A DNA stretch of 64,000 nt from Macrostomum lignano. Lineage: Eukaryota. The stretch lies in assembly GCA_002269645.1 (NCBI GenBank), contig NIVC01001008.1, positions 310,001 through 374,000 on the forward strand, in the 5' to 3' direction. Made by a program: the position numbers and the translations under genes. Every line of letters begins with the position of its first letter. Positions within the stretch are counted from its first letter, which is position 1. A model generated the notes under the pieces. It had not been told where the DNA came from, did not search any database, and saw nothing but the letters and a program-made list of their open reading frames with translations. Of this stretch, positions 25,948 to 61,212 are shown in pieces.

Positions 25948-26355
<408 letters not shown>

Positions 26356-27183: not shown

Positions 27184-28377
27184 ATGGCTGCTGATTCCGA
27201 CCAAACAGAGACGCAAACTTCGGCTATCGGTAATGCATCTGAAGTGGCTTTGCACACTGATGATCCCCTGACAACCATTAGCAGTGAGCAGTCACCGTCG
27301 GTCTGCTTAACAATGGATCAACTGTCTGGCAATGCCTCCAATGCCTACAATGCTGCTACCTCGATTGATGGAGATCGGGCCTGTCCAGATTCCGCTGCCG
27401 CTACCTCTGCTAGAGCGATTGAGTCAACCCTGCTTGCCCCCAATGCTGAAGTAGATGACGAGGTAATTCAGATCGTCATGCTTCCGTGTAGAGCTTTTAT
27501 GGAGAAAATAACAGCCTTTGAGTTAACATTTGAGTTTAGCTCTTCAGATTAATGATCTAAGACACCTTATCAGAGGCTTATCTACATCACTTTATCCCAG
27601 CATCGTAACCCTCAGAACCTGGATGCAGTGCCTTCGATGCCATTAAAATATTCTCAATCTCACTTTCATCACCCTAATCATCCTAAATGACCTCAAGCTG
27701 TCCGAATCTCCGTGACCCGCTGCATCACACCAATGACACATTTGAAATCGGATCTCCACGATATGAAGTTCCATGAACCAGGTAGCCTAGAGTCAACAGG
27801 TTGCACTATTTGTACACACGCTTGTACTCATTATTCAACCACCCAGAAGCCTGACGAGACTCCAGTCTGTCGGATCTGCCTGGACGGCGCCTCATCCGGA
27901 CCGCTGCGCCGCCTCTGCGCCTGCCAGGGCACCGTGGGGAGCCTCCACCGGCACTGCCTGACCCGCTGGCTCGGCCTGTCAAAGAAGCAGCACTGCGAGC
28001 TGTGCCTGCAGCCGCTGCCGGTGGTGATCGACCAGCCGGGCCTGGTACAGTACATCCGGAACGCCCCTAAACGCTGCCACTGTGTGGCTTTGCTAGACTT
28101 GGTCAGCCTCCTTCTGATGCTGCCGCTCATTGTGTACTGCAATCTGCTCTCCGTGTCCGCTTTGCAACACTTCAGAGAGCTGCGCTACCTTCGCCTGCGG
28201 CAGTACTCCTTCTGGGAGATTTGCTTTGGCATTGTGCTGACCCCTTTCCTGCTGTCCGGCTTCCTGCTCTGGATCTGGTTCGTGTGCCGCGGCCACCGTT
28301 CTGAGTACAGGCGCTGGCGTCTGGAGCATCGGCGGGTGACGCTGTGCGAGTCCGAGTCCTCCCTAGCTGAGCAGTGA
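27184..28377 (+). CDS. MARCH-family RING-CH (RINGv) membrane E3 ligase, 2 exons, ~269 aa
   Basis: Exons 27184-27462 (gag|gtaatt) and 27847-28377 (cccag|aag), phase 0. CRICLDG...CACQGTVGSLHRHCLTRW...CELC C4HC3 motif followed by two hydrophobic helices. Confidence 0.88.
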
Positions 28378-29564: not shown

Positions 29565-31505
29565 TGAGAAAGATAAGGAGGAGGGTGGCAGGGGTGGATT
29601 GAGGTGAAGAGACAGATAAGGAGGAGGGTGGCAGAGGGGGATTGAGGTGAAGAGACAGATAAGGAGGAGGGTGGCAGAGGGGATTGAGGTGAAGAGACAG
29701 ATAAGGAGGAGGGTGGCAGAGGGGGATTGAGGTGAAGAGACAGATAAGGAGGAGGGTGGCAGAGGGGGATTGAGGTGAAGAGACAGATAAGGAGGAGGGT
29801 GGCAGAGGGGATTGAGGTGAAGAGACAGATAAGGAGGAGGGTGGCAGAGGGGGATTGAGGTGAAGAGACAGATAAGGAGGAGGGTGGCAGAGGGGATTGA
29901 GGTGAAGAGACAGATAAGGAGGAGGGTGGCAGTGGATTGAGGTGAAGAGACAGATAAGGAGGAGGGTGGCAGAGGGGGATTGAGGTGAAGAGACAGATAA
30001 GGAGGAGGGTGGCAGAGGGGGATTGAGGTGAAGAGACAGATAAGGAGGAGGGTGGCAGAGGGGGATTGAGGTGAAGAGACAGATAAGGAGGAGGGTGGCA
30101 GAGGGGATTGAGGTGAAGAGACAGATAAGGAGGAGGGTGGCAGTGGATTGAGGTGAAGAGACAGATAAGGAGGAGGGTACGTGGCAGAGGGGGATTGAGG
30201 TGAAGAGACAGATAAGGAGGAGGGTGGCAGTGGATTGAGGTGAAGAGACAGATAAGGAGGAGGGTGGCAGAGGGGGATTGAGGTGAAGAGACAGATAAGG
30301 AGGAGGGTGGCAGAGGGGGATTGAGGTGAAGAGACAGATAAGGAGGAGGGTGGCAGAGGGGGATTGAGGTGAAGAGACAGATAAGGAGGAGGGTGGCAGT
30401 GGATTGAGGTGAAGAGACAGATAAGGAGGAGGGTGGCAGAGGGGGATTGAGGTGAAGAGACAGATAAGGAGGAGGGTGGCAGAGGGGGATTGAGGTGAAG
30501 AGACAGATAAGGAGGAGGGTGGCAGAGGGGGATTGAGGTGAAGAGACAGATAAGGAGGAGGGTGGCAGAGGGGGATTGAGGTGAAGAGACAGATAAGGAG
30601 GAGGGTGGCAGAGGGGGATTGAGGTGAAGAGACAGATAAGGAGGAGGGTGGCAGAGGGGGATTGAGGTGAAGAGACAGATAAGGAGGAGGGTGGCAGTGG
30701 ATTGAGGTGAAGAGACAGATAAGGAGGAGGGTACGTGGCAGAGGGGGATTGAGGTGAAGAGACAGATAAGGAGGAGGGTGGCAGTGGATTGAGGTGAAGA
30801 GACAGATAAGGAGGAGGGTGGCAGAGGGGGATTGAGGTGAAGAGACAGATAAGGAGGAGGGTACGTGGCAGAGGGGGATTGAGGTGAAGAGACAGATAAG
30901 GAGGAGGGTGGCAGAGGGGGATTGAGGTGAAGAGACAGATAAGGAGGAGGGTACGTGGCAGAGGGGGATTGAGGTGAAAAGACAGATAAGGAGGAGGGTG
31001 GCAGAGGGAGATTGAGGTGAAGAGACAGATAAGGAGGAGGGTGGCAGTGGATTGAGGTGAAGAGACAGATAAGGAGGAGGGTGGCAGAGGGGGATTGAGG
31101 TGAAGAGACAGATAAGGAGGAGGGTGGCAGAGGGGGATTGAGGTGAAGAGACAGATAAGGAGGAGGGTGGCAGTGGGGGATTGAGGTGAAGAGACAGATA
31201 AGGAGGAGGGTGGCAGTGGGGGATTGAGGTGAAGAGACAGATAAGGAGGAGGGTACGTGGCAGAGGGGGATTGAGGTGAAGAGACAGATAAGGAGGAGGG
31301 TGGCAGTGGATTGAGGTGAAGAGACAGATAAGGAGGAGGGTGGCAGAGGGGGATTGAGGTGAAGAGACAGATAAGGAGGAGGGTGGCAGAGGGGGATTGA
31401 GGTGAAGAGACAGATAAGGAGGAGGGTGGCAGAGGGGGATTGAGGTGAAGAGACAGATAAGGAGGAGGGTGGCAGAGGGGGATTGAGGTGAAGAGACAGA
31501 TAAGT
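29565..31505. repeat. 43-bp purine/G-rich minisatellite, ~45 copies
   Basis: Unit gagacagataaggaggagggtggcagagggggattgaggtgaa. Confidence 0.98.
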
Positions 31506-31656
31506 AGGGAGGCAGAGGACAGTCTAAATGAAGGAAATAACTGGTAACAGATGAGGTGCTGGGGTCGAGCTAAGCACGTCTGCATCATTGCTTATAAATG
31601 TTAAATAGTTGATTAGACTGAACCTCGATAGAGGACTACTTAAAAACGCCCTATAT

Positions 31657-34600
31657 TCACACGGAACTTCGTCTGTCTCTCCCTCCTCCAAGCTGCTCCG
31701 TTTGTGACGCGCTGTCTCTGCATGCCGGGCTGGTCTGAAGGCTTGCGTCCGCCAGTGGCGCCGCAGCGGCGACCGCAGGCGCTTCTGCTGAGGCTTTGAC
31801 GTTTGTGCTGAGTATTGTCTCCAGACTGGCTGCGGCTGCCGTTTGGAGAGTGGAGGAGTGGAGAGACTATTTGTTATAATCTGCTGATAGCCGCCTCCCA
31901 ACTACTCAGGGCTCTGATGGACCGCCACTGCCTGTCCTCCCAGGGCTCTGATTGGCCCACCACTGACTCTCCTATCAGGGCTCTGATTGACCCGCCACTG
32001 GCTCTCCTATCAGGGCTCTGATTGACCCGCCACTGGCTCTCCTATCAGGGCTCTGATTGGCCCACCACTGACTCTCCTTTCAGGGCTCTGATTGACCCGC
32101 CACTGGCTCTCCTATCAGGGCTCTGATTGACCCGCCACTGGCTCTCCTATCAGGGCTCTGATTGACCCGCCACTGGCTCTCCTATCAGGGCTCTGTTGAC
32201 CCGCCACTGCCCTGTCCTCTCGGGGCTCTTTTTGGACCGCCACTGCCTGTCCTCTCGGGGCTCTGATTGGCCCACCACTGCCTGTCCTCTCAGAGCTCTG
32301 ATTGGCCCTGCCACTGACTCTCCTTTCAGGGCTCTGATTGGCCCCGCCACTGCCTCTCCTCTCAGGGTTCTGATTGGACCCCAACTCCTATTATTCGACA
32401 AAGCGACGCTCACCTCTACACTGGCCGCAGGCTCCAGCGCTCTCTGAATTCTTCACACTACTGCCACCACCACCGCCACCACCGCCGCTGATGGCCAGGC
32501 TGACCAGAGGCAGCACGGCGGAGTTTCTCTGTGCCGCCATCATGCCTTTCAGGTCCAGCTTCCTGCTGCCGCTGCCGGCGCTCGAGCTGCTCTTGTTGTA
32601 GGCCCGTCTGGTTGAGGAGGAAGTCGATGCTAGACTGTGCACCGTGGACAGCGGCTGCTGCTGGCCTGACAGTCTGGAGAACTGCATCTTGGAGCTAGTT
32701 GAGTCCATCCTGATGGCGAATTCGTTGCCGTAGATGCTCACCCTTCGTTTGCTGGTCAGCCTGCGGTGGTTTATCTTGCCGTTTGGGGTCGAGGATGCGC
32801 CTCCGCCGGAGCCGTCCGCGTCATCGGCGGTGGCGCCTGCGGATCTTTCGTCAGCGCCTTCAGTGACGGCGGACGGTCCAGCAGTGGACTCTGCAATAGG
32901 GTCATCCGTGGTCCGATGGCCGTACACCTGCTTGTTGAACTCTTCTCCGTTGAACATGCTTTTGTTGATAGCCACTAGGGCTGTTAGGCGCTGAAGTGTT
33001 GCATGATTGGGCTGTGTTTATAACAGCTGCTAATTGGATAGTTAGTGCGTCTATGGTCTGCTAATTGGATAATTATTGTGCCTATAGCCTGCCAATTGCA
33101 ATGTTTCACCTGAGAGAAAGATCCTTTGGCGGTGAAGACCAAGTAATAAACAATGCAGACTGGCAGCGGCAGCAGCGGCAGGAACTCCAGCACATAACTG
33201 GCATTTATTGTCCAACTGGGCAGCGGCAGGCCCACCTCGTTCGGCTTTTTAAACCATTTAATTACCAGATTCGCCTGCGGAAAAGTTGATGTGGTCGCGC
33301 ACGAAATTGAATCAAGGCAATAAGTTATAAACCTTTTTGTTAATCTAATCTTGACTAGACGCCTAAATAAGCTGTTTGTTAGGATATACAGGCAAAAGAT
33401 AAGCATGCATCAACTACACTACTGTTAGTAGAAATAGAAGCAAAAATGAGTAAATTTAATTTAACCCAACAAAAGTGTCTGGGAAATTTCTGCTCTCACA
33501 ATCAGAGCAGCCGGTGACAGCACGGTCCAGCAGACTTTCCACCATAGCGACAGATTTCCTCGCAGCATAATCTTGATGATGGCGCTGAACTGCTGCACAC
33601 CGAACACCCAGCTGACGGTTGCCAGCTCCATGAGGCACAGCAGCGCCACCGACCAGGCGATGCCGTAGGCGTCAAGCAGTTCGACCAGGTGAAATCCTGC
33701 CTGCAGTTGTTTGTTGAAAATAGGCGCTCCGTTAATATTTGTGGGAAGGGAATTGCTGCAGCTATACTGTATTGGATTAGCAATTGGTTATGAGTTGATT
33801 AGTGCTGGCTCAAATAAAACTTTATAGTGCTGCTTTATAGGCATTGGGGACACAGCTGAGTATTTGGGTCACAGCTGGGGTTTTGGAGTTACAGCTGGGG
33901 TATTGGGGTCGCAGCTGGGGTATTGGAGTCACAGCTGGGGTATTGGGGTCATAGCTGGGGTATTGTGGTCACAGCTGGGGTATTGGAGTCACAGCTGGGG
34001 TATTGGGGTCGCAGCTGGGGTATTGGAGTCACAGCTGGGGTATTGGAGTCGCAGCTGGGGTATTGGAGTCACAGCTGGGGTATTGGAGTCGCAGCTGGGG
34101 TATTGGGGTCACAGCTGGGGTATTGGGGTCACAGGTAGGGTACTCAGGCTACACCCTGAGGCTAAAGGATATGGGGTGCCGGCAGCCACAACAGAAACGG
34201 CAGCCAGAAGACAGCAGGAACTCAGGCCGGCAGTCCCGCACAGAGGTGCTGAGCGGCAGCTGCAGGCCGGCCATGCCCAGACAGAAGGCCGGCAGCCACC
34301 AGACTCGAAGGCCTTCGCCGCCGACTCGCAGCAGGTCGTGAAAGCTGATTGGCCGGCCGCCGCAGAGACGCAGCGCGCCGGAGGCGGCGGTGAAGGCCAC
34401 GGCGGACAGGCAGTCGGCGCAGATGGCCAGGTTGAGAAAGGTGAGAATTGCCGCTGTCAAGAACAGAATCCCACTCAGCCAGGCCGGCTGCCAGCAGAGC
34501 AGCGCCGAGTAGGCAGCGAATGCGCCTGCGAGAGTCTCTGCAACAGCAGGGGGCAAACGGGGGCAATCGGATGTGGATCGCCATTGCCCAGGCTGTTTAT

Positions 34601-37600
34601 CTCGGGGAGCTCAGAGTTTGCTTATTGAAAAGTTTTTTTTCAAACTGAGGTATTGTTAGTTTTGTTGATTAGTTTGTAAGCTTGTTAATCCGCGTACTTA
34701 GATTTTTTAGTAGCAAAAGTTTAAGATATCTAATCGGGGATGTCTCTCTGATAAATTAGAGATCAGAAAGATCAGAGAGAGAAGAAAGATTATAGAGAGA
34801 TCACAGAGATCACAGAGATCACAGAGATCACAGAGATCACAGAGATCACAGAGATCACAGAGATCACAGAGATCAAAGAGAGCTCAGAGATCACAGAGAT
34901 CACAGAGATCACAGAGATCACAGAGATCACAGAGATCACAGAGATCACAGAGATCAAAGAGAGCTCAGAGATCACAGAGATCACAGAGATCACAGAGATC
35001 ACAGAGATCACAGAGATCAGAGAGATCACAGAGATCACAGAGATCACAGAGATCACAGAGATCACAGAGATCACAGAGATCACAGAGATCACAGAGATCA
35101 CAGAGATCACAGAGATCACAGAGATCACAGAGATCACAGAGATCAAAGAGAGCTCAAAGATCACAGAGATCACAGAGATCAAAGAGAGCTCAGAGATCAC
35201 AAAGATCAGAGAGATCACAAAGATCACAGAGATCACAGAGATCACAGAGATCAAAGAGAGCTCAAAGATCACAGAGATCACAGAGATCAAAGAGAGCTCA
35301 GAGATCAAAGAGAGCTCAGAGATCACAAAGATCAGAGAGATCACAAAGATCACAGAGATCACAGAGATCACAGAGATCAAAGAGAGCTCAAAGATCACAG
35401 AGATCACAGAGATCAAAGAGAGCTCAGAGATCACAAAGATCAGAGAGATCAGACAAGTTTTTATTTTTACAATAAAAGTCTATTAATCAAAGCAGATTTA
35501 GCATTAACAATGCATTAGCAAACACGCTAGCTGCCAAGAGTTACAACTCGTTAGAATTCGTCACTAGTGATAATATTAGGGAATCATGTGTCAATCAAAT
35601 GCCGGGTTCGGTTCTTATCCTCAGCGATTACCGCACTAAACAGTGGCAGAGATGAGAGCGCCAGCACAGCTGAGAACAGCATCATGAGCGGCCACCATCG
35701 GTCCAACAGGGAGCGGAGTCGTTGATGGCAACCGACGCACCTGCCAGACAGCCAGGTGTTGAGAACGTCGGCCAATACCAGAGTGTGCAGACACTCTGAG
35801 GAAAAGCTGAGCAAGGCCAGGATGAAGCTCCAGAGGCTGGTTGCCCAGCGGAAGCCGGGATTGGCTGAGGCGGCGGTGGCCGACATGATGAATACGCTGT
35901 AGCGAAATCCCAGGCCTGTAATTATTAGTGCCCCTGACTATGAACTTTAGCAATCCACTGTCTTGTATAGATTAGCAATCCACTGTCTTGTATAGATTAG
36001 CAATCCACTGTCTTGTATAGATTAGCAATCCACTGTCTTGTATAGATTAGCAATCCACTGTCTTGTATAGATTAGCAATCCACTGTCTTGTATAGATTAG
36101 CAATCCACTGTCTTGTATAGATTAGCAATCCACTGTCTTGTATAGATTAGCAATCCACTGTCTTGTATAGATTAGCAATCCACTGTCTTGTATAGATTAG
36201 CAATCCACTGTCTTGTATAGATTAGCAATCCACTGTCTTGTATAGATTAGCAATCCACTGTCTTGTATAGATTAGCAATCCACTGTCTTGTATAGCTTAG
36301 CAATCCACTGTCTTGTATAGCTTAGCAATCCACTGTCTTGTATAGCTTAGCAATCCACTGTCTTGTATAGATTAGCAATCCACTGTCTTGTATAGCTTAG
36401 CAATCCACTGTCTTGTATAGATTAGCAATCCACTGTCTTGTATAGCTTAGCAATCCACTGTCTTGTATAGATTAGCAATCCACTGTCTTGTATAGATTAG
36501 CAATCCACTGTCTTGTATAGATTAGCAATCCACTGTCTTGTATAGATTAGCAATCCACTGTCTTCTCGGTGCATAGATTAACAATCCTCTTTATCCTCAA
36601 TACATAGATTAGCAATTCACTATTGAATATGAGTACATAACTAGCACTCTAGTGCCCCCCCCTTCGGGACGGCCAATAAGCAAGGAGCAAAATTATTTAT
36701 ACAAATCCATTAGAAAAGCACATTTTCTTAAGAACCAATTATTGCAAAATTTCAATACTTCTTCAGTGATACATCACCTTCCTTACTCGTATTCGAGTAA
36801 AAATGTCACGGACAAAGATGTTTTCTATGAATCTTTTTTTTTCCACAAGTAACAAAAGGACAACAAAATAAAGCCTTAGCAAGCATCCCCCAGTCAGCAA
36901 GAACCCCCACCCCCAGACAGCAAGCGCCCCCCAGACAGCAAGCGCCCCCAGACAGCAAGCATCCCCCCAGACAGCAAGCATCCCCCCAGACAGCAAGCGC
37001 CCCCCAGACAGCAAGCATCCCCCCAGACAGCAAGCGCCCCCCAGACAGCAAGCGCCCCCAGACAGCAAGCGCCCCCAGACAGCAAGCATCCCCCCAGACA
37101 GCAAGCATCCCCCCAGACAGCAAGCGCCCCCCAGACAGCAAGCATCCCCCCAGACAGCAAGCGCCCCCCAGACAGCAAGCGCCCCCAGACAGCAAGCGCC
37201 CCCCCAACCAGCAAGCGCCCCCAGACAGCAAGCATCCCCCCAGACAGCAAGCATCCCCCCAGACAGCAAGCGCCCCCCAGACAGCAAGCGCCCCCCAGAC
37301 AGCAAGCATCCCTGGATAGAAAGAATCCCTGGATAGAAAGAATCCCTAGTTAGTACGGTTTTTGGGGCTAGTAGAAGTTTAATCTATATTTTGAGCTTCA
37401 CCAATTACCAAATAGGCTACTATTATAAGTAGCAATTGTGAAACCGAAGCCTGAGAACACTCACTGTCGTCAAACAGGCTGGAAATTTCCAGCGAGCTGT
37501 CGGTGGACATGATGATGCCGGCGAACGAAAACAGGATGAAGCCGCAAAAGAAGCTGACGAGGAAGTCAATAATTGCCACGGACACTGCGGTTCTGCGAGG

Positions 37601-40600
37601 AGGGTTGGGATCAGGTAAATTAGCTCGCCCAGAGCGCTTTATAATCGGGATAGGGGGATTTTCTGCAGATAGAATCGGGATAGGGAAATTTTTAAGAGAG
37701 AATCGGGATAGGGGGATTTTCTGTAGACAGAATCGGGATTTGGGGAATTTTTTAAGAGAGAATCGGGATAGGGGAATTTTCTGCAGATAGAATCGGGATA
37801 GGGGAATTTTCTGCAGATAGAATCGGGATAGGGGACTTTTCTGCAGAGAGAATCGAGATAGGGGAATTTTCTGAAGATAGAATCGGGATTAGGGGATTTT
37901 CTGTAGACAGAATCGGGATTTGGGGAATTTTTTAAGAGAGAATCGGGATAGGGGAATTTTCTGCAGAGAGAGTCGAGATAGGGGAATTTTCTGCAGATAG
38001 AATCGGGATAGGGGACTTTTCTGCAGAGAGAGTCCAGATATGGGAATTTTCTGAAGATAGAATCGGAATAGGGGTATTTCTGCATAGAAAGTCGGGATAG
38101 GGGAATTTTCTGCAGATAGAATTGGGATAGGGGAATTTCTGCATAAAAAGTCGGGATAGGGGAATTTTCTGTAGAGAGAATCGAGATAGGGGAATTTTCT
38201 GAAGATACAATCGGGATAGGTGAATTTTCTGCAGATAGAATTGGGATAGGGGAATTTTCTGTAGACAGAATTGGGATTAGGGGAATTTTTTAGGAGAGAA
38301 TCGGGATAGGGGAATTTTGCTGCAGTGAGAATCACGAATTTTTTGCAGAGAGAATCGGGATAGGGGAATTTTATTAAGAGAGAATCGGGATTGGGGAATT
38401 TTCTGCAGAGAGTCGGGTTAGGGGAATTTTCTGTAGACAGAATCGGGATAGGGGAATTTACTGCAGACAGAATCGGGATAGGGGAATTTTCTGCAGAGAG
38501 AATCGAAATAGGGTAATTTTCTGTAGACAGAATTGGGATTAGGGGAATTTTTTAAGAGAGAATCGGGATAGGGGAATTTTCTACAGAAAGAATCAGGATA
38601 GGGGAATTTTCTGCAGACAGAATTGGCATTAGGGGAATTTTTTGAGAGAATCGGGATAGGGGAATTTTCTGCAGATAGAATCGGGATAGGGGAATTTTTT
38701 GAGAGAATCGGGATAGGGGAATTTTCTGCAGATAGAATCGGGATAGGGGAATTTTCTGAAGACAGAATTGGGATTAGGGGAATTTTTTGAGAGAATCGGG
38801 ATAGGGGAATTTTCTGCAGATTGAATCGGGATAGGGGAATTTTTTGAGAGAATCGGGATAGGGGAATTTTCTGAAGATAGAATCGGGATTAGGGGATTTT
38901 CTGTAGACAGAATCGGGATTTGGGGAATTTTTTAAGAGAGAATCGGGATAGGGGAATTTTCTGCAGAGAGAGTCGAGATAGGGGAATTTTCTGCAGATAG
39001 AATCGGGATAGGGGACTTTTCTGCAGAGAGAGTCCAGATATGGGAATTTTCTGAAGATAGAATCGGAATAGGGGTATTTCTGCATAGAAAGTCGGGATAG
39101 GGGAATTTTCTGCAGATAGAATTGGGATAGGGGAATTTCTGCATAGAAAGTCGGGATAGGGGAATTTTCTGTAGAGAGAATCGAGATAGGGGAATTTTCT
39201 GAAGATACAATCGGGATAGGTGAATTTTCTGCAGATAGAATTGGGATAGGGGAATTTTCTGTAGACAGAATTGGGATTAGGGGAATTTTTTAGGAGAGAA
39301 TCGGGATAGGGGAATTTTGCTGCAGTGAGAATCACGAATTTTTTGCAGAGAGAATCGGGATAGGGGAATTTTATTAAGAGAGAATCGGGATTGGGGAATT
39401 TTCTGCAGAGAGTCGGGTTAGGGGAATTTTCTGTAGACAGAATCGGGATAGGGGAATTTACTGCAGACAGAATCGGGATAGGGGAATTTTCTGCAGAGAG
39501 AATCGAAATAGGGTAATTTTCTGTAGACAGAATTGGGATTAGGGGAATTTTTTAAGAGAGAATCGGGATAGGGGAATTTTCTACAGAAAGAATCAGGATA
39601 GGGGAATTTTCTGCAGACAGAATTGGCATTAGGGGAATTTTTTGAGAGAATCGGGATAGGGGAATTTTCTGCAGATAGAATCGGGATAGGGGAATTTTTT
39701 GAGAGAATCGGGATAGGGGAATTTTCTGCAGATAGAATCGGGATAGGGGAATTTTCTGAAGACAGAATTGGGATTAGGGGAATTTTTTGAGAGAATCGGG
39801 ATAGGGGAATTTTCTGCAGATTGAATCGGGATAGGGGAATTTTTTGAGAGAATCGGGATAGGGGAATTTTCTGAAGATAGAATCGGGATTAGGGGATTTT
39901 CTGTAGACAGAATCGGGATTTGGGGAATTTTTTAAGAGAGAATCGGGATAGGGGAATTTTCTGCAGAGAGAGTCGAGATAGGGGAATTTTCTGCAGATAG
40001 AATCGGGATAGGGGACTTTTCTGCAGAGAGAGTCCAGATATGGGAATTTTCTGAAGATAGAATCGGAATAGGGTATTTCTGCATAGAAAGTCGGGATAGG
40101 GGAATTTTCTGCAGATAGAATTGGGATAGGGGAATTTCTGCATAAAAAGTCGGGATAGGGGAATTTTCTGTAGAGAGAATCGAGATAGGGGAATTTTCTG
40201 AAAATACAATCGGGATAGGTGAATTTTCTGCAGATAGAATTGGGATAGGGGAATTTTCTGTAGACAGAATTGGGATTAGGGGAATTTTTTAGGAGAGAAT
40301 CGGGATAGGGGAATTTTGCTGCAGTGAGAATCACGAATTTTTTGCAGAGAGAATCGGGATAGGGGAATTTTATTAAGAGAGAATCGGGATTGGGGAATTT
40401 TCTGCAGAGAGTCGGGTTAGGGGAATTTTCTGTAGACAGAATCGGGATAGGGGAATTTACTGCAGACAGAATCGGGATAGGGGAATTTTCTGCAGAGAGA
40501 ATCGAAATAGGGTAATTTTCTGTAGACAGAATTGGGATTAGGGGAATTTTTTAAGAGAGAATCGGGATAGGGGAATTTTCTACAGAAAGAATCAGGATAG

Positions 40601-43600
40601 GGGAATTTTCTGCAGACAGAATTGGCATTAGGGGAATTTTTTGAGAGAATCGGGATAGGGGAATTTTCTGCAGATAGAATCGGGATAGGGGAATTTTTTG
40701 AGAGAATCGGGATAGGGGAATTTTCTGCAGATTGAATCGGGATAGGGGAATTTTTTGAGAGAATCAAGATAGGGGAATTTTCTGCAGATAGAATCGGGAT
40801 AGGGGAATTTTCTGAAGACAGAATCGGTATAGGGGAATTTTCTGCAGATAGAATCGGGATAGGGGAATTTTTTGAGAGAATCGGGATAAGGGAATTTTCT
40901 GCAGATAGAATCGGGATAGGGGAATTTTTTGAGAGAATCGGGATAGGGGAATTTTCTGCAGATAGAATCGAGATAGGGCAATTTTCTGAAGATAGAATCG
41001 GGATTAGGGGATTTTCTGTAGACAGAATCGGGATTTGGGGAATTTTTTAAGAGAGAATCGGGATAGGGGAAGTTTCTGCAGAGAGAGTCGAGATAGGGGA
41101 ATTTTCTGCAGATAGAATCGGGATAGGGGACTTTTCTGCAGAGAGAGTCCAGATAGGGGAATCTTCTGAAGATAGAATCGGAATAGGGGTATTTTCTGCA
41201 GATAGAATCGGGATAGGGAAATTTCTGCATAGAAAGTCGAGATAGGGGAATTTTCTGCAGATAGAATCGGGATAGGGAAATTTCTGCATAGAAAGTCGGG
41301 ATAGGGGAATTTTCTGCAGATAGAATTGGGATAGGTGAATTTCTGCATAGAAAGTCGGGATAGGGGAATTTTCTGTAGAGAGAATCGAGATAGGGGAATT
41401 TTCTGAAGATACAATCGGGATAGGGGAATTTTCTGCAGATAGAATTGGGATAGGGGAATTTTCTGTAGACAGAATTGGGATTAGGGGAATTTTTTAGGAG
41501 AGAATCGGGATAGGGGAATTTTGCTGCAGTGAGAATCACGAATTTTTTGCAGAGAGAATCGGGATAGGGGAATTTTATTAAGAGAGAATCGGGATTGGGG
41601 AATTTTCTGCAGAGAGTCGGGTTAGGGGAATTTTCTGTAGACAGAATCGGGATAGGGGAATTTACTGCAGACAGAATCGGGATAGGGGAATTTTCTGCAG
41701 AGAGAATCGAAATAGGGTAATTTTCTGTAGACAAAATTGGGATTAGGGGAATTTTTTAAGAGAGAATCGGGATAGGGGAATTTTCTACAGAAAGAATCAG
41801 GATAGGGGAATTTTCTGCAGACAGAATTGGGATTAGGGGAATTTTTTGAGAGAATCGGGATAGGGGAATTTTCTGCAGATAGAATCGGGATAGGGGAATT
41901 TTCTGAAGACAGAATCAGGATAGGGGAATTAGAGAGAACTACGCTATGAGAAATGTTTCTAGCAAGGAATTTGTTAGGGAGATTTTCTATATATGCGAGC
42001 TAGATTACGATTGGGGAATTCTCCGAATCAAAAAACCCTAGTCATGAATTCTCACTTCTTGCAGCCGGTGTGAAACCGGTTGTAACTGGACAAATTGATC
42101 AGGCATCCGAACCCGATGCCCAGGTTGTAGAACACCTGCACGAGAGCTTCGTACCAAGCCTGCGGCTCTGTGAGGATGTCCCAGTTGGGCCGGATAAACA
42201 TGCGAATGCCGGTCAGTGAGCGCGAGTCCCGCACAGCCAGGATGAACAAGATGACGATGAGCAGCAGGCCCAGGACTAGGCACACGCTGAGTATCTGCGC
42301 GACGATGGGGCGGAACGGGGGCGGTAGGGGGCGCTTAGGATTCTGTAAGGGAGAGAGAGAGTATTTGATACTGATTGGAGTGGCGCAGAGGAAGATAGAT
42401 AGAGATGGATAGAGATGGGCAGAGCTTGATATAGATGGGCAGAGACGGATATAGATGAATAGAGGTGGATAGAGATGGACGGAGCTGGATAGAGATGGGC
42501 AGAAATGGATAGAGATGGATAGAGATGGATAGAGATGGGCAGAGACGGATAGAGATGGACAGAGATTGATAGAGATGGATAGAGATGGATAGAGATGGAT
42601 AGAGATGGATAGAGATGGATAGAGATGGGCAGAGACGGATAGAGATGAATAGAGATGGATAGAGATGGATAGAGATGGATAGAGATGAATAGAGATGAAC
42701 AGAGATGGACAGAGATGGATAGAGATGGACAGAGATGGATAGAGATGGGCAGAGACGGATATAGATGAATAGAGATGGATAGAGATGGATAGAGATGGAT
42801 AGAGATGGGCAGAGACGGATAGAGATGAATAGAGATGGATAGAGATGGATAGAGATAGATAGAGATGGATAGAGATGGGCAGAGATGGATAGAGATGAAT
42901 AGAGATGGATAGAGATGGACAGAGATGGATAGAGATGGACAGAGATGGATAGAGATGGATAGAGATAGATAAAGATGGGTAGAGATGAATAGAGATGGAT
43001 AGAGATGGATAGAGATGAATAGAGATGGATAGAGATGGATAGAGATGGATAGAGATGGATAGAGATGGATAGAGATAGATAGAGATGGATAGAGATGGGC
43101 AGAGACGTATAGAGATGAATAGAGATGGATAGAGATGGACAGAGATGGATAGAGATGGACAGAGATGGATAGAGATGGACAGAGATGGATAGAGATGGAT
43201 AGAGATAGATAAAGATGGGTAGAGATGAATAGAGATGGATAGAGATGGATAGAGATGAACAGAGATGGATAGAGATAGATAAAGATGGGTAGAGATGAAT
43301 AGAGATGGATAGAGATGGATAGAGATGAACAGAGATGGATAGAGATAGATAAAGATGGGTAAAGATAAAGATGGAATAAAGACGGGATAAAGATAAAGAT
43401 GGAAAGAGATAGATAGAGATGAATAGAGATGGGCAGAGATGAATAGAGATGGGTAGAGATGATTAGAGATGGGTAGAGATGAATAGAGATGGGTAGAGAT
43501 GAATAGAGATGGGTAGAGATGATTAGAGATGGGTAGAGATGATTAGAGATGGGTAGAGATGATTAGAGATGGGTAGAGATGATTAGAGATGGGTAGAGAT

Positions 43601-44199
43601 GAATAGAGATGATTGGTAAAGATCGATAGAAATCGGAAAGATACGGATTCAGGCGAATTAATATCGGAGGAAAATGGCGAGCAATGGTGATGTGGGAAAG
43701 GGAGGTAGAAAGGGAGAATTGAAGAGCAGTTCAATTTTGAGTCGCTCAGCAACTCATTAATGTTTTTAATTAGCTGTTGGTGCGCTTGTAAGTAGTGCTT
43801 TTATTATAAAAAATCGGTGACTTGAACGCTAAAAATTGGTTAGAGAACAAGTTGTTGTTCATAAGAAGATCTGGTTCCATGAAGTTTACAATAAATATTG
43901 CTGTTATCAAGAGTTAGCTCTGGTATAGCAAGTGGCGCAGGTTAGTTTTTAATCGTAACGGTTTAGCCAAAACCATTAGCCAAAAATATTATACAATTTT
44001 TCATCCAAGCATTGGTTTACCATCATTGTGGCTAAGTTTATTGGCCGTTCAAATGTCTGAAAACAATGTTTTGGACTTATTAATTGAAGGTTCAGAAGTG
44101 ATACACAGGTAAGGATTCATTGACTGATCGGCTGATTGGTTTACTGTTTGATTGATATATTGATTGATGGTGGATGGCTTGATTGATTGACTGATTGAC

Positions 44200-44263
<64 letters not shown>

Positions 44264-44272
44264 AGATAGATA

Positions 44273-44308
<36 letters not shown>

Positions 44309-44398
44309 TATTGATTTATTGACTGATCGGCTGATTGGCTGATTGGTTTACTGTTTGATTGATATATTGATTGATGGTGGATGGCTTGATTGATTGAC

Positions 44399-44467
<69 letters not shown>

Positions 44468-45740
44468 TCTTGATTTCTTGATTGATTGACTGATTTATTG
44501 ATTGACTGATTGACTGATTGACTGATTGATTGACTGATTAACTGATTGATTGATTGATGGATTTCTTGACTGATTAACTGATTGATTGATTGATGGATTT
44601 CTTGATTGATTGACTGATTGATTGATTGACTGATTGATTGATGGCTGATTGATTGATTGATTGAATGATTGTTTGATAGTTTCATAGGCCATAGAAGATA
44701 TAGCTACCTTTCCAGAATTTCGAATGCCCCTGCACAGAGACACCGCAATGAGCAGCCACATGAGCAGGCAGCAGCCCCACAGCTGCCAGTTGATGCTGTT
44801 AAATTCGCCCGAGTTGTCCGGGGAGAGGCCGAGCACACCGAATCTGACAGGTGACAAGATTGACGGCTTTGTGCTCATGCTATCGGTCTGTGGATAGTAG
44901 ATTACATTGTCACACCTGCTCCATCAGCATCAGGGGATATTTATCAACCAGTGTCACACCTGAGCAGTTCTGCTCCATCAGCATCAGGGGATATTTATCA
45001 ACCAGTGTCACACCTGAGCAGTTCTGCTCCATCAGCATCAGGGGATATTTATCAACCAGTGTCGCACCTGAGCAGTTCTGCTCCATCAGCATCAGGGGAT
45101 ATTTATCAACCAGTGTCACACCTGAGCAGTTCTGCTCCATCAGCATCAGGGGATATTTATCAACCAGTGTCGCACCTGAGCAGTTCTGCTCCATCAGCAT
45201 CATGGCAATCAGGATCAATAATCAGCAGCAATAAAACTAATTGACGTCACACCTGAAATATTCCCTACTGGCCACGATAAAATTAACAGCCGTGAAGTTG
45301 GTGACGCTCAATACAGCGGAAGTGCCATTCAAATCGGTGCCATTTTCTGACCAGCTTTCATTGTAGACGCTGAAGCTGCAGTCTAAAATAGAAGGAGAAA
45401 TTAGTAGGGAATAAATCAACGTGTCTCTGGCAACGGGAGGCCGAACATTTGCTATCTGTCCTTGTTAGGTTGGTGAACACTTTCCGGGATTTAGATCCCA
45501 GCTGCTCAATCCGCCAGATTGCTTTCGTCAGGCGATTCGTGACCGGCCAACACCCTGAGACGTCTCTCAGATTCGAGTTCAGAATTTTGAAACAGCTGCT
45601 GCCATGCAATCTCGAGTGGCATTTCAGCTGACCGTTTCATCTCACGTGCCAGCTGCTTCCCAGTTCCGCCTGCCTCCCCTGCCTTCTTTGAGCTCTCCGC
45701 TCGTTCCTAGATCTCTCGGATCTCTCTGATCTCCCTGATC

Positions 45741-45837
<97 letters not shown>

Positions 45838-47453
45838 CTCTCTGATCTCTCTGATCTCTCTGATCTCTCTGATCTCTCTGATCTCCCTGATCTCCCTGAT
45901 CTCCCTGATCTCCCTGATCTCTCTGATCTCTCTGATCTATCTGATCTCCCTGATCTCCCTGATCTCCTGATCTCTCTGATCTCTCTGATCTATCTGATCT
46001 CCCTGATCTCCCTGATCTCCCTGATCTCCCTGATCTCTCTGATCTATCTGATCTATCTGATCTCCCTGATCTCCCTGATCTCCCTGATCTCTCTGATCTC
46101 TCTGATCTATCTGATCTCCCTGATCTCCCTGATCTCCCTGATCTCCCTGATCTCTCTGATCTATCTGATCTATCTGATCTCCCTGATCTCCCTGATCTCC
46201 CTGATCTCTCTGATCTCCCTGATCTCCCTGATCTCTCTGATCTCTCTGATCTCTCTGATCTCTCTGATCTCTCTGATCTCTCTGATCTCTCTGATCTCTC
46301 TGATCTCTCTGATCTCTCTGATCTCTCTGATCTCTCTGATCTCTCTGATCTCTCGTCTGCTCCGTGTCTTGTCTCGTCCTGTAGTCTCTCCCGCACTCAC
46401 TGGCGCTGTTGAAGCTGTGTTCGCAGTTGGCCCAGGGCAGGTTGGGCGCCAAAGAGGCAAAGAAATAGTACAGGCACAGCGCACCCATGGCGCTGTAGTA
46501 CACGGCCAGGTAGAGCAGAATAATGAAGGACGCAATGCCGATGCCCCGGCTAATGGGCACAATTTTCCACACTCTGTAGAAGCCTTCGCGAAAGTATTGG
46601 CCTAGTATGAGCTCCAAAAAGTAGATCGGTATGCCGCAGATGATCATCATGATGAGGTAGGGGGCGAAGAATGCACCTGGAATGAGTGGGAATTTGAGCG
46701 AGTACTATAGATCCCACCGACATGGAGGTGACTTTGATCCCACCAAGATCCCACCAAAAGTTAGTGTAGTGTATGTAGGCTTGCTTATCCGGAAGTGAAG
46801 TACGCTGATACACGTATCATTGACCCTCCTATCGAAAGTAGCTTAGATCCCACCTACCGGAAGTGACTTAGATCCCACCTACCGGAAGTGGCTTAGCTCC
46901 TACGTACCGGAAGTGGCTTAGATCCTACCTACCGGAAGTGGCTTAGCTCCTACCTACCGGAAGTGGCTTAGCTCCTACCTACCGGAAGTGGCTTAGCTCC
47001 TACCTACCGGAAGTGGCTTAGCTCCTACCTACCGGAAGTGGTTTAGCTCCTACCTACCGGAAGTGGCTTAGCTCCTACCTACCGGAAGTGGCTTAGCTCC
47101 TACCTACCGGAAGTGGCTTAGCTCCTACCTACCGGAAGTGGCTTAGCTCCTACGTACCGGAAGTGGCTTAGATCCTACCTACTGGAAATGGCCTAGATCC
47201 CCTCCACCTACAGGAAATGGCATAAATATCAAATGTCACCTGTAAGCAAATCAAACTCATGCTACTCTACAAACACACCCATATTCCTCAGGAAATCGCT
47301 CTCACCTCCGCCGTACTTGAAGCAGAGAACGGGGAATCGCCACACGTTGCCCATGCCGATTGTAAAGGCCATGCAGGAGACGAAGAAATCGTACTTTCCC
47401 CTCCAGGCGTGCCAGTAGTGATCGGCGTCTTCGTCGCTCTCGTGGGATCGCGT
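31657..47453 (-). CDS. SLC6 (sodium:neurotransmitter symporter family) transporter B, divergent; no in-frame ATG found
   Basis: Exons 47453-47306, 46676-46401, 45382-45253, 44843-44708, 42294-42056, 37592-37465, 35915-35632 (alternative 34525-34242), 33700-33500, 33274-33110, 32990-32414, 31835-31657; phases are consistent. Motifs [54 protein letters not shown]. The last exon is less certain; read-through would stop at 32391. Confidence 0.88.
31915..32370. repeat. 35-bp minisatellite in the last SLC6-B intron
   Basis: Unit cagggctctgattgacccgccactggctctcctat. Confidence 0.95.
33845..34135. repeat. 20-bp minisatellite
   Basis: Unit cacagctggggtattggagt. Confidence 0.96.
34242..34525 (-). CDS. 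Alternative (duplicated) exon 7b of SLC6-B encoding EL4b-TM8-TM9
   Basis: Open 284-nt exon, ctcgcag|GC (phase 1) to TCT|gtgcgg (phase 0). Same length and phases as exon 7a; aligns to SLC6-A exon 9. Confidence 0.7.
34775..35452. repeat. 9-bp repeat (agagatcac)n between exons 7a and 7b
   Basis: Direct inspection. Confidence 0.97.
35950..36612. repeat. 25-bp minisatellite, ~25 copies
   Basis: Unit gattagcaatccactgtcttgtata. Confidence 0.98.
36885..37310. repeat. 18-19-bp C-rich minisatellite
   Basis: Unit cccccagacagcaagc(gc/atc). Confidence 0.97.
37643..41930. repeat. ~31-bp satellite (4.3 kb) with ~1-kb higher-order repeat, in SLC6-B intron 5
   Basis: Unit gagagaatcgggataggggaattttctgca; marker tgcagtgagaatcacg at 38321, 39321, 40320 and 41525. 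Confidence 0.98.
42400..43610. repeat. 10-bp repeat (agagatggat)n
   Basis: Direct inspection. Confidence 0.97.
44120..44670. repeat. (ATTG)n microsatellite with an internal duplication
   Basis: Direct inspection. Confidence 0.96.
44905..45203. repeat. 54-bp minisatellite, ~5.5 copies
   Basis: Unit ccatcagcatcaggggatatttatcaaccagtgtcacacctgagcagttctgct. Confidence 0.97.
45710..46355. repeat. (TC)n plus 9-bp (gatctctct)n compound repeat
   Basis: Direct inspection. Confidence 0.97.
46845..47190. repeat. 25-bp minisatellite carrying ACCGGAAGTG (ETS consensus), SLC6-B intron 1
   Basis: ACCGGAAGTG at 46856 and every 25 bp to 47156 (13 perfect copies). Confidence 0.97.
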
Positions 47454-47574
47454 CTGACAAGGGAGCGGTTTGGTTGGGTGACACTTTTGGGATGATGAGG
47501 CACAATTATTGGAGATGAGTCACATTCGAATGTGGTGATGAATTACGCTTACATGTATAAAGTACAAGTCATAA

Positions 47575-48200
47575 TCATGGGTTGATGAGTCATACTCATG
47601 GGTTGATGAGTCATACTCATGGGTTGATGAGTCATACTCATGGGTTGATGAGTCATACTCATGGGTTGATAAGTCATACTCATGGGTTGATGAGTCATAC
47701 TCATGGGTTGATGAGTCATACTCATGTGTTGATGAGTCATACTCATGGGTTGATGAGTCATACTCATAGGTTGATGAGTCATACTCATGGGTTGATGAGT
47801 CATACTCATAGGTTGATGAGTCATACTCATGGGTTGATGAGTCATACTCATGGGTTGATGAGTCATACTCATGGGTTGATGAGTCATACTCATGGGTTGA
47901 TGAGTCATACTCATGGGTTGATGAGTCATACTCATGGGTTGATGAGTCATACTCATGGGTTGATGAGTCATACTCATGGGTTGATGAGTCATACTCATGG
48001 GTTGATGAGTCATACTCATGGGTTGATGAGTCATACTCATGGGTTGATGAGTCATACTCATGGGTTGATGAGTCATACTCATGGGTTGATGAGTCATACT
48101 CATGGGTTGATGAGTCATACTCATGGGTTGATGAGTCATACTCATGGGTTGATGAGTTATGCTCATTGTGTGATGAGTCATACTCATTGTCACACTCATA
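47575..48200. repeat. 21-bp minisatellite carrying ATGAGTCAT (AP-1 consensus)
   Basis: Unit tcatactcatgggttgatgag, ~27 copies. Confidence 0.98.
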
Positions 48201-48589
48201 CTCATTACTCAAATTTGCTGCTTTAACGTCTCCTGCCCTATCTTGTAATCAAAATATCGAAGGTTTGTGAAAAAATCTTGAATAAGAAAATGCAGTGCTT
48301 CTACAGGTATAGCAGAAATTTATATGAATTTCTATCGAACTGCCTTTTCTGCTTTGAATAGGCCCCTATTGAGTTTTCATTGATTTCGGATAAACTGCTT
48401 TGAGGCAGCAATGGGCAGCGCTGCATGCGGTGTATTGATGAGATTTTCCCATGCCCGAGGCGGTAGTTGCTTCATAAGCATGCTCCCTAATTTCTTCTCA
48501 GCTAGCCTCTGTAACAAACAGCTCTTTAAAAATAAAATGTTATTCTACAAAGTGCGTTTCGATCTTATCACCGATAAACACTCGGGGTC

Positions 48590-49692
48590 CCTTCTCATTC
48601 CCCAAAACGACACTGGGAAGCCTTCTCATTCCCCAAAACGACACTGGGAAGCCATCTCATTCCCCAAAACGACACTGGGAAGCCTTCTCATTCCCCAAAA
48701 CGACACTGGGAAGCCATCTCATTCCCCAACACGACACTGGGAAGAATTCTCATTCCCCAAAACGACACTGGGAAGCCGTCTCATTCCCCAAAACGACACT
48801 GGGAAGCCGTCTCATTCCCCAAAACGACACTGGGAAGCCGTCTCATTCCCCAAAACGACACTGGGAAGCCATCTCATTCCCCAAAACGACACTGGGAAGC
48901 CATCTCATTCCCCAAAACGACACTGGGAAGCCATCTCATTCCCCAACACGACACTGGGAAGAATTCTCATTCCCCAAAACGACACTGGGAAGCCATCTCA
49001 TTCCCCAACACGACACTGGGAAGCCATCTCATTCCCCAAAACGACACTGGGAAGCCATCTCATTCCCCAAAACGACACTGGGAAGCCGTCTCATTCCCCA
49101 AAACGACACTGGGAAGCCGTCTCATTCCCCAAAACGACACTTGGAAGCCTTCTAATTCCCCAAAACGACACTGGGAAGCCATCTCATTCCCCAAAACGAC
49201 ACTGGAAGCCGTCTCATTCCCCAAAACGACACTGGGAAGCCGTCTCATTCCCCAAAACGACACTGGGAAGCCGTCTCATTCCCCAAAACGACACTGGGAA
49301 GCCTTCTCATTCCCCAAAACGACACTGGGAAGCCGTCTTATTCCCCAAAACAACACTGGGAAGCCGTCTCATTCCCCAAAACGACACTGGGAAGCCTTCT
49401 CATTCCCCAAAACGACACTGGGAAGCCATCTCATTCCCCAAAACGACACTGGGAAGCCATCTCATTCCCCAACACGACACTGGGAAGCCATCTCATTCCC
49501 CAAAACGACACTGGGAAGCCATCTCATTCCCCAACACGACACTGGGAAGCCATCTCATTCCCCAAAACGACACTGGGAAGCCATCTCATTCCCCAAAACG
49601 ACACTGGGAAGCCATCTCATTCCCCAACACGACACTGGGAAGAATTCTCATTCCCCAAAACGACACTGGGAAGCCGTCTCATTCCCCAAAAA
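48590..49692. repeat. 31-bp minisatellite between SLC6-A and SLC6-B
   Basis: Unit cattccccaaaacgacactgggaagccatct. Confidence 0.98.
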
Positions 49693-49722
49693 GCACTCGG
49701 ACACTTTCATATCCATGACAGC

Positions 49723-61212
<11,490 letters not shown>

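What the first reader, a model, noticed from the sequence alone, without database searches (positions are those of the whole stretch)
47306..47520. SLC6-B lacks its own start codon; first acceptor is in frame with a flatworm spliced-leader AUG
Seen: the TM1 exon frame is closed by TGA at ~47520-47522 with no ATG before the conserved region. A strong acceptor ctcccttgtcag|ACG CGA TCC (47453) is in phase 0. I found no convincing ATG-bearing phase-0 exon in the 2.2 kb up to the SLC6-A stop. Established: flatworm SL exons end in AUG, which can act as the initiator Met. Inference: SL trans-splicing would give [24 protein letters not shown] and could resolve an A-B dicistronic transcript.
Basis: partly seen in the sequence, partly recalled or inferred. 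Interest (0 to 1): 0.72.

Follow-up and report, generated by a model that had tools for sequence, protein, structure and literature searches.

The report
Transporter gene lacking its own start

Summary
On the minus strand, exon 1 of SLC6-B (47453-47306) starts at a good 3' splice site in codon phase 0. Its frame is closed upstream by TGA (47522-47520). It has no ATG before transmembrane helix 1. The 2.27-kb spacer holds no credible ATG-bearing first exon.

The window is Macrostomum lignano (Mlig_3_7, NIVC01001008.1, bases 300001-364000). Its 35-nt spliced leader ends in ATG, about 30% of its genes are trans-spliced, and the repeat-adjusted A-B spacer (549 bp) meets the published operon criterion. 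SL-AUG initiation is therefore plausible and is my preferred reading (about 0.48).

A phase-0 donor (GAG|GTGATT, of median strength) sits 15 nt before the SLC6-A stop. Spliced to the same acceptor, it gives a stop-free A-B fusion ORF of 1498-1514 aa. The public annotation carries one SNF gene here with a 1510-aa product, against 683 aa for A and 820-836 aa for B. I read that as a merged A-B model. It could be a chimeric-model artefact or a real two-domain protein.

If SL-AUG is right, this is one more instance of a known flatworm mechanism. A search for three junction k-mers in public RNA-seq would decide.

The parts
47306..47453 (-). SLC6-B exon 1 (148 nt, ends in phase 1). It encodes the short N-terminal tail plus TM1 (GMGNVWRFP) and has no ATG before TM1.
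47454..47473 (-). 3' splice site of exon 1: ccaaaccgctcccttgtcAG, with AG at 47455-47454. It scores 8.3 bits and is the best acceptor in the spacer. It is a candidate SL acceptor and/or cis acceptor.
47520..47522 (-). In-frame TGA that closes the exon-1 reading frame 23 codons upstream of the acceptor.
47551..47553 (-). Possible cis donor CAT|GTAAGCG (7.8 bits), 99 nt upstream of the acceptor. The in-phase upstream frame (48248-47553) is open but holds no Met.
47567..48187 (.). 21-bp tandem array, 29.6 copies, directly upstream of exon 1. On the minus strand it is rich in out-of-frame ATGs.
48188..48592 (-). 405-bp unique spacer segment between the two arrays. It could hold the SLC6-A 3' end or a SLC6-B promoter. 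It has no AATAAA or ATTAAA.
48572..48598 (-). Best (weak) candidate ATG-bearing phase-0 mini first exon, MRRDPECLS|GTGATAA, donor 6.0 bits. It is within chance expectation.
48593..49691 (.). 31-bp tandem array, 35.5 copies, filling most of the A-B spacer.
49723..49725 (-). Stop codon (TGA) of SLC6-A.
49739..49743 (-). Phase-0 donor GAG|GTGATT inside the last SLC6-A exon. The exon would end at 49741, 15 nt before the stop. It scores 7.6 bits. Joined to 47453 it gives a stop-free A-B fusion ORF.
49723..61212 (-). SLC6-A coding region: 12 exons, 683 aa, own ATG at 61212, complete SNF domain.
31657..47453 (-). SLC6-B coding region: 11 exons, 820 aa (836 with the alternative exon-5 acceptor at 42342), complete SNF domain. 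The stop ends at 31657, which is the 3' end of the annotated CDS.

Best explanation
SLC6-B is an intact, separately functioning transporter gene whose first exon starts at a 3' splice site and carries no initiator. Shown: gene integrity, the acceptor, the closed frame, the absence of a cis ATG exon, the identity of the organism, and the sequence of its SL. Inferred: the primary transcript either reads through from SLC6-A or starts in the 405-bp unique spacer, and it carries the repeat-filled, ATG-rich upstream region as an outron. The 35-nt M. lignano spliced leader is then trans-spliced to 47453. Its terminal AUG lands in frame and is the first and only AUG ahead of TM1. Translation would give [24 protein letters not shown]..., a 19-residue cytoplasmic tail before TM1. 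On this reading the 1510-aa public gene model is a chimeric A-B model, built from a minor cis-spliced by-product of the same pre-mRNA (donor at 49741 joined to acceptor at 47453).
For: The organism is M. lignano. Its SL ends in ATG, 30% of its genes are trans-spliced and 15% are in operons (PMC8629364; 38.8% in PMC5730564). SL AUG as initiator is established: more than 40 S. mansoni cDNAs need it (Cheng 2006 via PMC9851317), and it is noted as a start codon for Macrostomum in PMC10468722. SLC6-B is intact, with 11 exons, consensus GT-AG sites, no stops, and a Pfam SNF match over profile positions 3-521 of 524 at E=9e-105. The frame is closed upstream and the first internal Met lies in TM1. The acceptor scores 8.3 bits and is the best in the spacer. 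No cis ATG exon rises above chance. Phase 0 is required by this model but is only a 1-in-3 coincidence under the fusion model. The repeat-adjusted A-B distance is 549 bp, under the 1 kb criterion. Chimeric gene models at flatworm operons are common and can span several kb (PMC12582326). The same annotation makes a chimeric model of the tandem ATP synthase c genes in this window.
Against: No SL-containing read or cDNA for this site could be examined. The annotation pipeline cuts at SL peaks (PMC5730564), yet it seems to have left A and B joined. The acceptor reads TGTCAG, not the enriched YTNCAG. Two median-strength cis donors lie upstream (49741 and 47553). The SL AUG has U at position -3, a weak context. 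There is no canonical poly(A) signal between A and B, although there is none after B either.
Confidence: 0.48

Rival explanations
1. Cis-spliced fusion. The segment 49740-47454 is an ordinary 2287-nt intron. Its donor, GAG|GTGATT, lies five codons before the apparent SLC6-A stop, which is then intronic. Splicing joins the two ORFs in frame. SLC6-B needs no start because it is the C-terminal half of a roughly 1500-aa, 24-TM two-domain SLC6 protein that initiates at the SLC6-A ATG. The topology allows this, because both SLC6 termini are cytoplasmic (established knowledge).
For: GenBank-derived gene calls list one minus-strand SNF gene with a 1510-aa product whose CDS ends exactly at the SLC6-B stop, 31657. 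My models give A = 683 aa and B = 820-836 aa. The donor 49741 to acceptor 47453 link gives a stop-free ORF of 1498/1511/1514 aa, depending on the exon-5 acceptor. 1510 fits a model that is 5'-partial by 1-4 codons, as the neighbouring model P0005 is 5'-partial. The donor scores 7.6 bits against a median of 8.1 for true donors. About 0.08 such phase-matched sites are expected by chance in that exon (4 exonic GT >=7.6 bits in 4.5 kb). The annotation is built from spliced RNA-seq and Trinity evidence plus TransDecoder (PMC5730564). Two-SNF-domain models exist in molluscs.
Against: I could not retrieve the 1510-aa sequence or its exon table, and no simple link reproduces 1510 exactly. The model is absent from the protein collection. 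Chimeric models of adjacent genes are a documented artefact in flatworms (PMC12582326), and this window has another. No functional tandem SLC6 protein is known to me. A and B share only 28% identity, and both best match domain 2 of the mollusc proteins, so the arrangement is not an inherited architecture. The acceptor being in phase with the SL AUG would be a coincidence.
Confidence: 0.3
2. An unrecognised cis 5' exon supplies the ATG. It could be the weak mini-exon at 48598-48572, or an exon outside the spacer such as within or upstream of SLC6-A. It is spliced to 47453.
For: One phase-0 candidate exists, MRRDPECLS|GTGATAA, with donor 6.0 bits and G at -3. The 405-bp unique segment could hold a promoter.
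Against: Candidates are fewer and weaker than chance. The ATG sits in the last unit of a 35-copy array full of other ATGs. The in-phase frame behind the better donor at 47553 has no Met. The annotation shows no separate SLC6-B gene.
Confidence: 0.08
3. SLC6-B is a 5'-truncated duplicate that is not translated as a transporter. The tandem-repeat expansion replaced its original first-exon start, making it a young pseudogene. Alternatively it is translated from the internal Met in TM1 or from a non-AUG codon.
For: A 621-bp minisatellite abuts the exon. The TM7-TM8 region of B is divergent. SLC6-A keeps its ATG, N-terminal tail and TM1 in one exon.
Against: 820 codons over 11 exons have no stop or frameshift and all splice sites are intact. 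The SNF match is full-length at E=9e-105, and the TM1 and TM6 motifs are conserved. At 28% identity to A the duplication is ancient, so an untranslated copy should have decayed. Starting at Met28 would delete TM1a.
Confidence: 0.08

Closest known systems
SL-AUG-dependent mRNAs of Schistosoma mansoni (Cheng, Cohen, Ndegwa and Davis 2006, as cited in PMC9851317 and PMC12582326)
   Same: The flatworm SL ends in AUG. The acceptor is in frame with an ORF that has no initiator of its own. The SL AUG becomes the initiator Met.
   Different: Those cases rest on cDNAs and translation assays. Here there is only genomic inference, in a free-living macrostomid, for a 12-TM transporter, and a competing cis donor lies upstream.
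Macrostomum lignano SL trans-spliced genes and operons (Ustyantsev and Berezikov 2021, PMC8629364; Wudarski 2017, PMC5730564)
   Same: Same species. The pair lies on the same strand. The repeat-adjusted spacer is 549 bp, under the 1 kb limit. The spacer is inflated by tandem repeats, exactly as described for operons. The acceptor is a CAG.
   Different: No SL-read evidence was seen for this gene. The acceptor reads TGTCAG rather than YTNCAG. The raw spacer, 2.27 kb, is long.
Chimeric gene models at flatworm operons (PMC12582326)
   Same: One annotated gene has a product of about the summed length of two complete, separately recognisable proteins. The spacer is several kb. The downstream part starts at a candidate SL acceptor.
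   Different: That work covers parasitic flatworms and predictor-based annotations. Here the model comes from a transcript-assembly pipeline designed to cut at SL sites. The two halves are paralogues of one family.
Two-SNF-domain protein models in molluscs (Ylistrum balloti XP_060064335.1, 1573 aa; Mytilus galloprovincialis VDH94761.1; Gigantopelta XP_041349165.1; Physella XP_059161224.1)
   Same: Two SLC6 domains lie in one predicted polypeptide of 1100-1700 aa in spiralians. The segment between the domains is 66% identical between Mytilus and Ylistrum.
   Different: These are predicted models only. Both M. lignano genes resemble their domain 2, so there is no orthology of arrangement. They may be chimeric models too.

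Membership tests
SLC6 / NSS transporter (Pfam PF00209 SNF) | Full-length match to the SNF profile above the curated cut-off | tested here: met
   B: 351.8 bits, E 8.9e-105, profile positions 3-521 of 524. A: 489.9 bits, profile positions 1-522 of 524. The cut-off is 27 bits.
SLC6 / NSS transporter (Pfam PF00209 SNF) | Conserved TM1 (GNVWRFP) and TM6 (GxG...SYN) motifs, and end-to-end alignment to solved transporters | tested here: met
   B has GMGNVWRFP and [17 protein letters not shown]. It aligns to human DAT residues 61-599 at E 5.6e-84. The TM7-8 region is divergent.
SL trans-spliced gene of M. lignano | The organism has SL trans-splicing with a defined SL | tested here: met
   The window is GCA_002269645.1 NIVC01001008.1. 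The SL sequence and its frequency are in PMC8629364 and PMC5730564.
SL trans-spliced gene of M. lignano | SL-containing reads map with their 3' part starting at the acceptor | not testable with these tools
The TBONE-based annotation apparently did not cut here, which is weak negative evidence.
SL trans-spliced gene of M. lignano | [quoted passage not shown] | tested here: inconclusive
   The acceptor is strong (8.3 bits). Donors of 7.8 bits (47553) and 7.6 bits (49741) lie upstream. Their number is within chance density.
SL trans-spliced gene of M. lignano | Enriched acceptor motif [T/C]TNCAG | tested here: not met
   The site reads TGTCAG, with G at -5. The motif occurs in only 9551 of 21754 trans-spliced sites (PMC8629364), so it is not obligatory.
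SL-AUG-initiated ORF (slORF, flatworm type) | The acceptor is in frame with the conserved ORF, there is no in-frame stop after it, there is no own AUG before the conserved domain, and the frame is closed upstream | tested here: met
   The SL+exon 1 RNA has its first ATG at nt 33-35 and the next at codon 28, in TM1.
SL-AUG-initiated ORF (slORF, flatworm type) | Evidence of translation from the SL AUG | not testable with these tools
   This needs ribosome profiling or N-terminal proteomics.
M. lignano operon (criterion of PMC8629364) | Adjacent genes on the same strand with no opposite-strand gene between them, and a repeat-subtracted distance under 1 kb | tested here: met
   The distance is 2269 bp. 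Subtracting the arrays of 1099 bp and 621 bp leaves 549 bp. No ORF of note lies on the plus strand apart from repeat-derived frames.
M. lignano operon (criterion of PMC8629364) | The downstream gene is SL trans-spliced | not testable with these tools
   See above.
Chimeric (fused) gene model | One annotated gene whose product covers two complete, independently recognisable proteins | tested here: inconclusive
   The product is 1510 aa and the CDS ends at the B stop. A is 683 aa and B is 820-836 aa, each with a full SNF domain. The exon table was not seen, and 1510 was not reproduced exactly.

The most novel reading that the evidence does not exclude
One acceptor, two fates. The 47453 splice site is used both in cis and in trans. 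In cis it pairs with the donor five codons before the SLC6-A stop, giving a covalently linked 24-TM A-B hetero-tandem transporter. In trans it pairs with the SL, whose AUG makes SLC6-B alone. The choice between cis- and trans-splicing would then set whether the two paralogous transporters are made as one polypeptide or separately. This would be a natural concatenated SLC6 dimer, possibly paralleling the two-SNF-domain models seen in molluscs.
Probability: 0.12. Interest if true: 0.65.

Novelty: new member of a known kind. Interest (0 to 1): 0.3.

Why it matters
If the SL reading is right, this is a clean textbook-style case in a transgenic model flatworm. A 12-TM transporter could not be made at all without the AUG donated by the spliced leader, and the public gene model (one 1510-aa protein) should be split in two. 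If the fusion reading is right, it would be an unusual natural tandem SLC6 protein. Either way, the locus shows how tandem paralogues, repeat-inflated spacers and shared cis/trans acceptors confound flatworm annotation. It also offers a simple assay, three junction k-mers, for competition between cis- and trans-splicing at one site.

Tried and rejected
1. Rfam and tRNA scans of the window found nothing. The SL sequence is not in the window, even with up to 3 mismatches.

2. Homology searches with B exons 1-2 and with exons 5-10 did not return the window's own annotated protein or any transcript-derived B protein. They returned only distant SLC6 fragments and a 5'-truncated UniRef model, P0125. 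No N-terminus from a cDNA could therefore be read.

3. Exact look-ups of the ATP synthase c ORFs starting at their Met failed, because the annotated product is 5'-partial. P0125 has no contig on record.

I did not try to get round this.

5. I tried to reproduce the 1510-aa product. I tested single-intron links, one cassette exon, three exon-5 acceptors and alternative last introns. Nothing with credible sites gives exactly 1510. It fits only if the model is 5'-partial by 1-4 codons.

6. I rejected SLC6-B plus repeat-encoded extensions as the source of 1510 aa. The maximum is about 1068 aa through the 47553 donor, or about 1006 aa from intron-4 read-in.

7. I rejected orthology of the A-B arrangement to the mollusc two-domain proteins.

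8. A poly(A) signal scan was uninformative. There is no AATAAA between A and B, but none after B either.

9. I rejected a splice from SLC6-A exon 1 to SLC6-B exon 2. It would be in frame, but it leaves the intact, conserved B exon 1 unexplained.
Full report
WHAT IS THERE

The feature lies on the minus strand. Reading 48000-46800 shows an exon, 47453-47306, that encodes [49 protein letters not shown](G). It is bounded by ...ccgctcccttgtcag| and |gtgaga. ACG at 47453 is a complete codon, so the acceptor is in phase 0. The same frame is closed by TGA at 47522-47520, and none of the 23 codons between holds an ATG. The first in-frame ATG is codon 28, inside TM1.

THE TWO GENES

I built both gene models by hand from open frames, tblastn with homologues, and GT-AG sites.
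- SLC6-A has 12 exons and 683 aa. Its own ATG is at 61212, in the same exon as TM1, and its stop is TGA at 49725-49723.
- SLC6-B has 11 exons from 47453 to a stop ending at 31657. It encodes 820 aa, or 836 aa with an equally good alternative acceptor for exon 5.

Both give full-length Pfam SNF matches. B covers profile positions 3-521 of 524 at E 9e-105, and A has E 1e-146. B aligns end to end with human DAT, with B residue 16 opposite DAT residue 61. The two proteins are 28% identical, so they are old paralogues. Most intron positions and phases are shared. B is therefore an intact gene, not debris.

THE ORGANISM

The window also carries two tandem mitochondrial ATP synthase subunit c genes on the plus strand. 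Searching with one returned the window's own product, and the nearest named relatives were Macrostomum lignano proteins. Looking that product up placed the window at bases 300001-364000 of NIVC01001008.1 in assembly GCA_002269645.1, which is M. lignano Mlig_3_7. The flatworm assumption is right.

M. lignano has one 35-nt SL, CGGTCTCTTACTGCGAAGACTCAATTTATTGCATG, which ends in ATG. About 30% of its genes are trans-spliced and 15% lie in operons. Operon spacers are typically inflated by repeats, and the published operon criterion is a repeat-subtracted distance under 1 kb (PMC8629364). The SL gene is not in the window.

IS THE OBSERVATION MORE THAN CHANCE?

A PWM built from the other 21 acceptors and 21 donors of the two genes gives the exon-1 acceptor 8.3 bits. 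True acceptors score 0.5-11.8 leave-one-out, with a median of 6.2. It is the best AG in the whole 2269-nt spacer. Resampling gives 0.88 such sites per 2.27 kb, so only about 0.03-0.05 are expected in the short interval where the exon has to begin. The site is very likely a real 3' splice site.

Enumeration of all ATG...GT first exons in phase 0 found six. The best is a 9-codon exon, 48598-48572, with a 6.0-bit donor. That is fewer than chance, since resampling gives a mean of 4.5.

The spacer is 1099 bp of 31-bp repeats, 621 bp of 21-bp repeats and 549 bp of unique sequence. It therefore passes the operon criterion.

Phase 0 alone is weak evidence. In S. mansoni the SL AUG is in frame in 28% of trans-spliced transcripts, although more than 40 cDNAs depend on it (Cheng 2006, as quoted in PMC9851317).

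1. A phase-0 donor, GAG|GTGATT, sits inside the last SLC6-A exon. The exon would end at 49741, 15 nt before the stop. It scores 7.6 bits, against a median of 8.1 for true donors. Joined to 47453 it removes the SLC6-A stop and gives a stop-free A-B ORF of 1498, 1511 or 1514 aa, depending on the exon-5 acceptor.

2. A 7.8-bit donor, CAT|GTAAGCG, lies 99 nt upstream of the acceptor (exon end 47553). Its in-phase upstream frame runs open through the 21-bp array as (THEYDSS)n, but it holds no Met.

3. The gene calls recorded for this contig list a single minus-strand SNF gene with a 1510-aa product, whose CDS ends exactly at my SLC6-B stop, 31657. Neither A (683 aa) nor B (820-836 aa) comes near 1510, and neither does B with any repeat-encoded extension (at most about 1070 aa). 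The sum of A and B does. I could not obtain the sequence or the exon table. 1510 fits the 49741-to-47453 link only if the model is 5'-partial by 1-4 codons, as the neighbouring model P0005 is 5'-partial. The merged-model reading is therefore an inference, which I hold at about 0.85.

HOW THE ANNOTATION WAS MADE

The annotation came from StringTie/TACO transcript assembly plus mapped Trinity contigs. Transcripts were cut by the TBONE pipeline at SL-read and poly(A) peaks, and ORFs were then called with TransDecoder (PMC5730564). A continuous 1510-aa ORF therefore implies a read-supported in-frame junction between A and B, and no SL or poly(A) peak strong enough to cut there.

Two things weaken this. 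Chimeric gene models at flatworm operons are common and can span several kb. Flatworm SL acceptors are also widely shared with cis-splicing (PMC12582326). This same annotation joins the two ATP synthase c copies into one model. An older UniRef model, P0127, chains SLC6-B exons to the antisense of three plus-strand genes.

WEIGHING THE READINGS

Both leading readings explain the missing ATG.
- The SL reading needs the acceptor to be in phase 0, which the data satisfy, and treats the phase-matched donor in SLC6-A as a coincidence of about 0.08.
- The fusion reading explains the donor and the 1510-aa model. It treats the match to the SL AUG as a 1-in-3 coincidence, and it requires a kind of protein not known to function.

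Two-SNF-domain models do exist in molluscs, with a 66%-identical inter-domain segment between Mytilus and Ylistrum. However, both M. lignano genes resemble their second domain. There is thus no inherited architecture, and the mollusc models may themselves be chimeras.

My probabilities are:
- SL-donated AUG as the functional route: 0.48.
- A functional cis fusion: 0.30.
- An unseen cis exon: 0.08.
- A non-translated or aberrantly initiated copy: 0.08.
- Remainder unassigned.

I think it likely (about 0.75) that A-B fusion transcripts exist at some level, whichever route is functional.

COMPARISON WITH WHAT IS KNOWN, AND NOVELTY

The proposed mechanism is the flatworm SL-AUG initiator described by Cheng et al. 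in 2006. The context is that of the M. lignano operons of Ustyantsev and Berezikov (2021). The annotation problem is the chimeric-model class described in PMC12582326. If the SL reading is right, the locus is a new instance of a known kind. Its interest lies mainly in curation, since one gene would be split into two, and in providing a neat test case for competition between cis- and trans-splicing.

The more novel possibility is a dual-fate acceptor that yields either a covalent A-B tandem transporter or SLC6-B alone. It is not excluded, but it has little support.

WHAT WOULD SETTLE IT

The GenBank CDS join, the SL-read and T-fill tracks of the M. lignano genome browser, or counts of three junction k-mers in public RNA-seq (k-mer sequences) would each settle the matter quickly.

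Noticed in passing
window 24318-26355 (+): Two tandem, near-identical mitochondrial ATP synthase subunit c genes (ATG at 24342, second copy ending at 26352). The public annotation has one model spanning both copies. Its 122-aa product starts PSSSQPVAM..., without a Met, so it is 5'-partial. This looks like a chimeric model of tandem duplicates.
   Followed up: partly
window 55823-56833 (-): A mariner/Mos1-type transposase remnant (Pfam HTH_48 and Transposase_1) broken over three reading frames. It sits inside intron 7 of SLC6-A.
   Followed up: partly
window 47567-48187 (-), with 46828-47200 and 48593-49691: Minisatellites fill the introns and the A-B spacer. The 21-bp array is open in two minus-strand frames. 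One frame, (THEYDSS)n, is in phase with the 47553 donor and with SLC6-B but has no Met. The other, (PMSMTHQ)n, has two Met per unit but is out of phase.
   Followed up: partly
window 34523-22921 (-): UniRef A0A1I8HVN2 (P0127, 981 aa, M. lignano) maps here at 98-100% identity. It starts with an ORF in SLC6-B intron 7 (34523-34242, AFAAYSALL...). It continues through SLC6-B exons 8-10 and then through the antisense of the RINGv, ATP synthase c and coiled-coil genes. It is either a prediction artefact or a sign of long minus-strand read-through.
   Followed up: partly
proteins P0128-P0130 and P0240 (not in the window): Predicted proteins with two SNF domains occur in molluscs (Gigantopelta 1227 aa, Mytilus 1093/1260 aa, Ylistrum 1573 aa, Physella 1685-1723 aa). 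The segment between the domains is 66% identical over 137 aa between Mytilus and Ylistrum. This could mean real tandem SLC6 proteins or a conserved tandem gene pair that was mis-merged.
   Followed up: partly
window 47454-49722 and 31000-31656 (-): There is no AATAAA or ATTAAA in the 2.27 kb after the SLC6-A stop, nor in the 650 nt after the SLC6-B stop. Only variants occur (AATAAC at 48544, TATAAA at 48324, AATAAT at 47510).
   Followed up: no
window 1-861 (-); 27691-28374 (+); 4569-4805 (+): Other genes in the window are a rhodopsin-type GPCR running off the window start, a RINGv-domain gene and a C3HC4 RING-finger ORF.
   Followed up: no
window 42294 versus 42342 (-): SLC6-B exon 5 has two in-frame acceptors of similar strength, 48 nt apart. 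The upstream one adds [16 protein letters not shown] to the TM4-TM5 loop. A third AG lies at 42333.
   Followed up: partly
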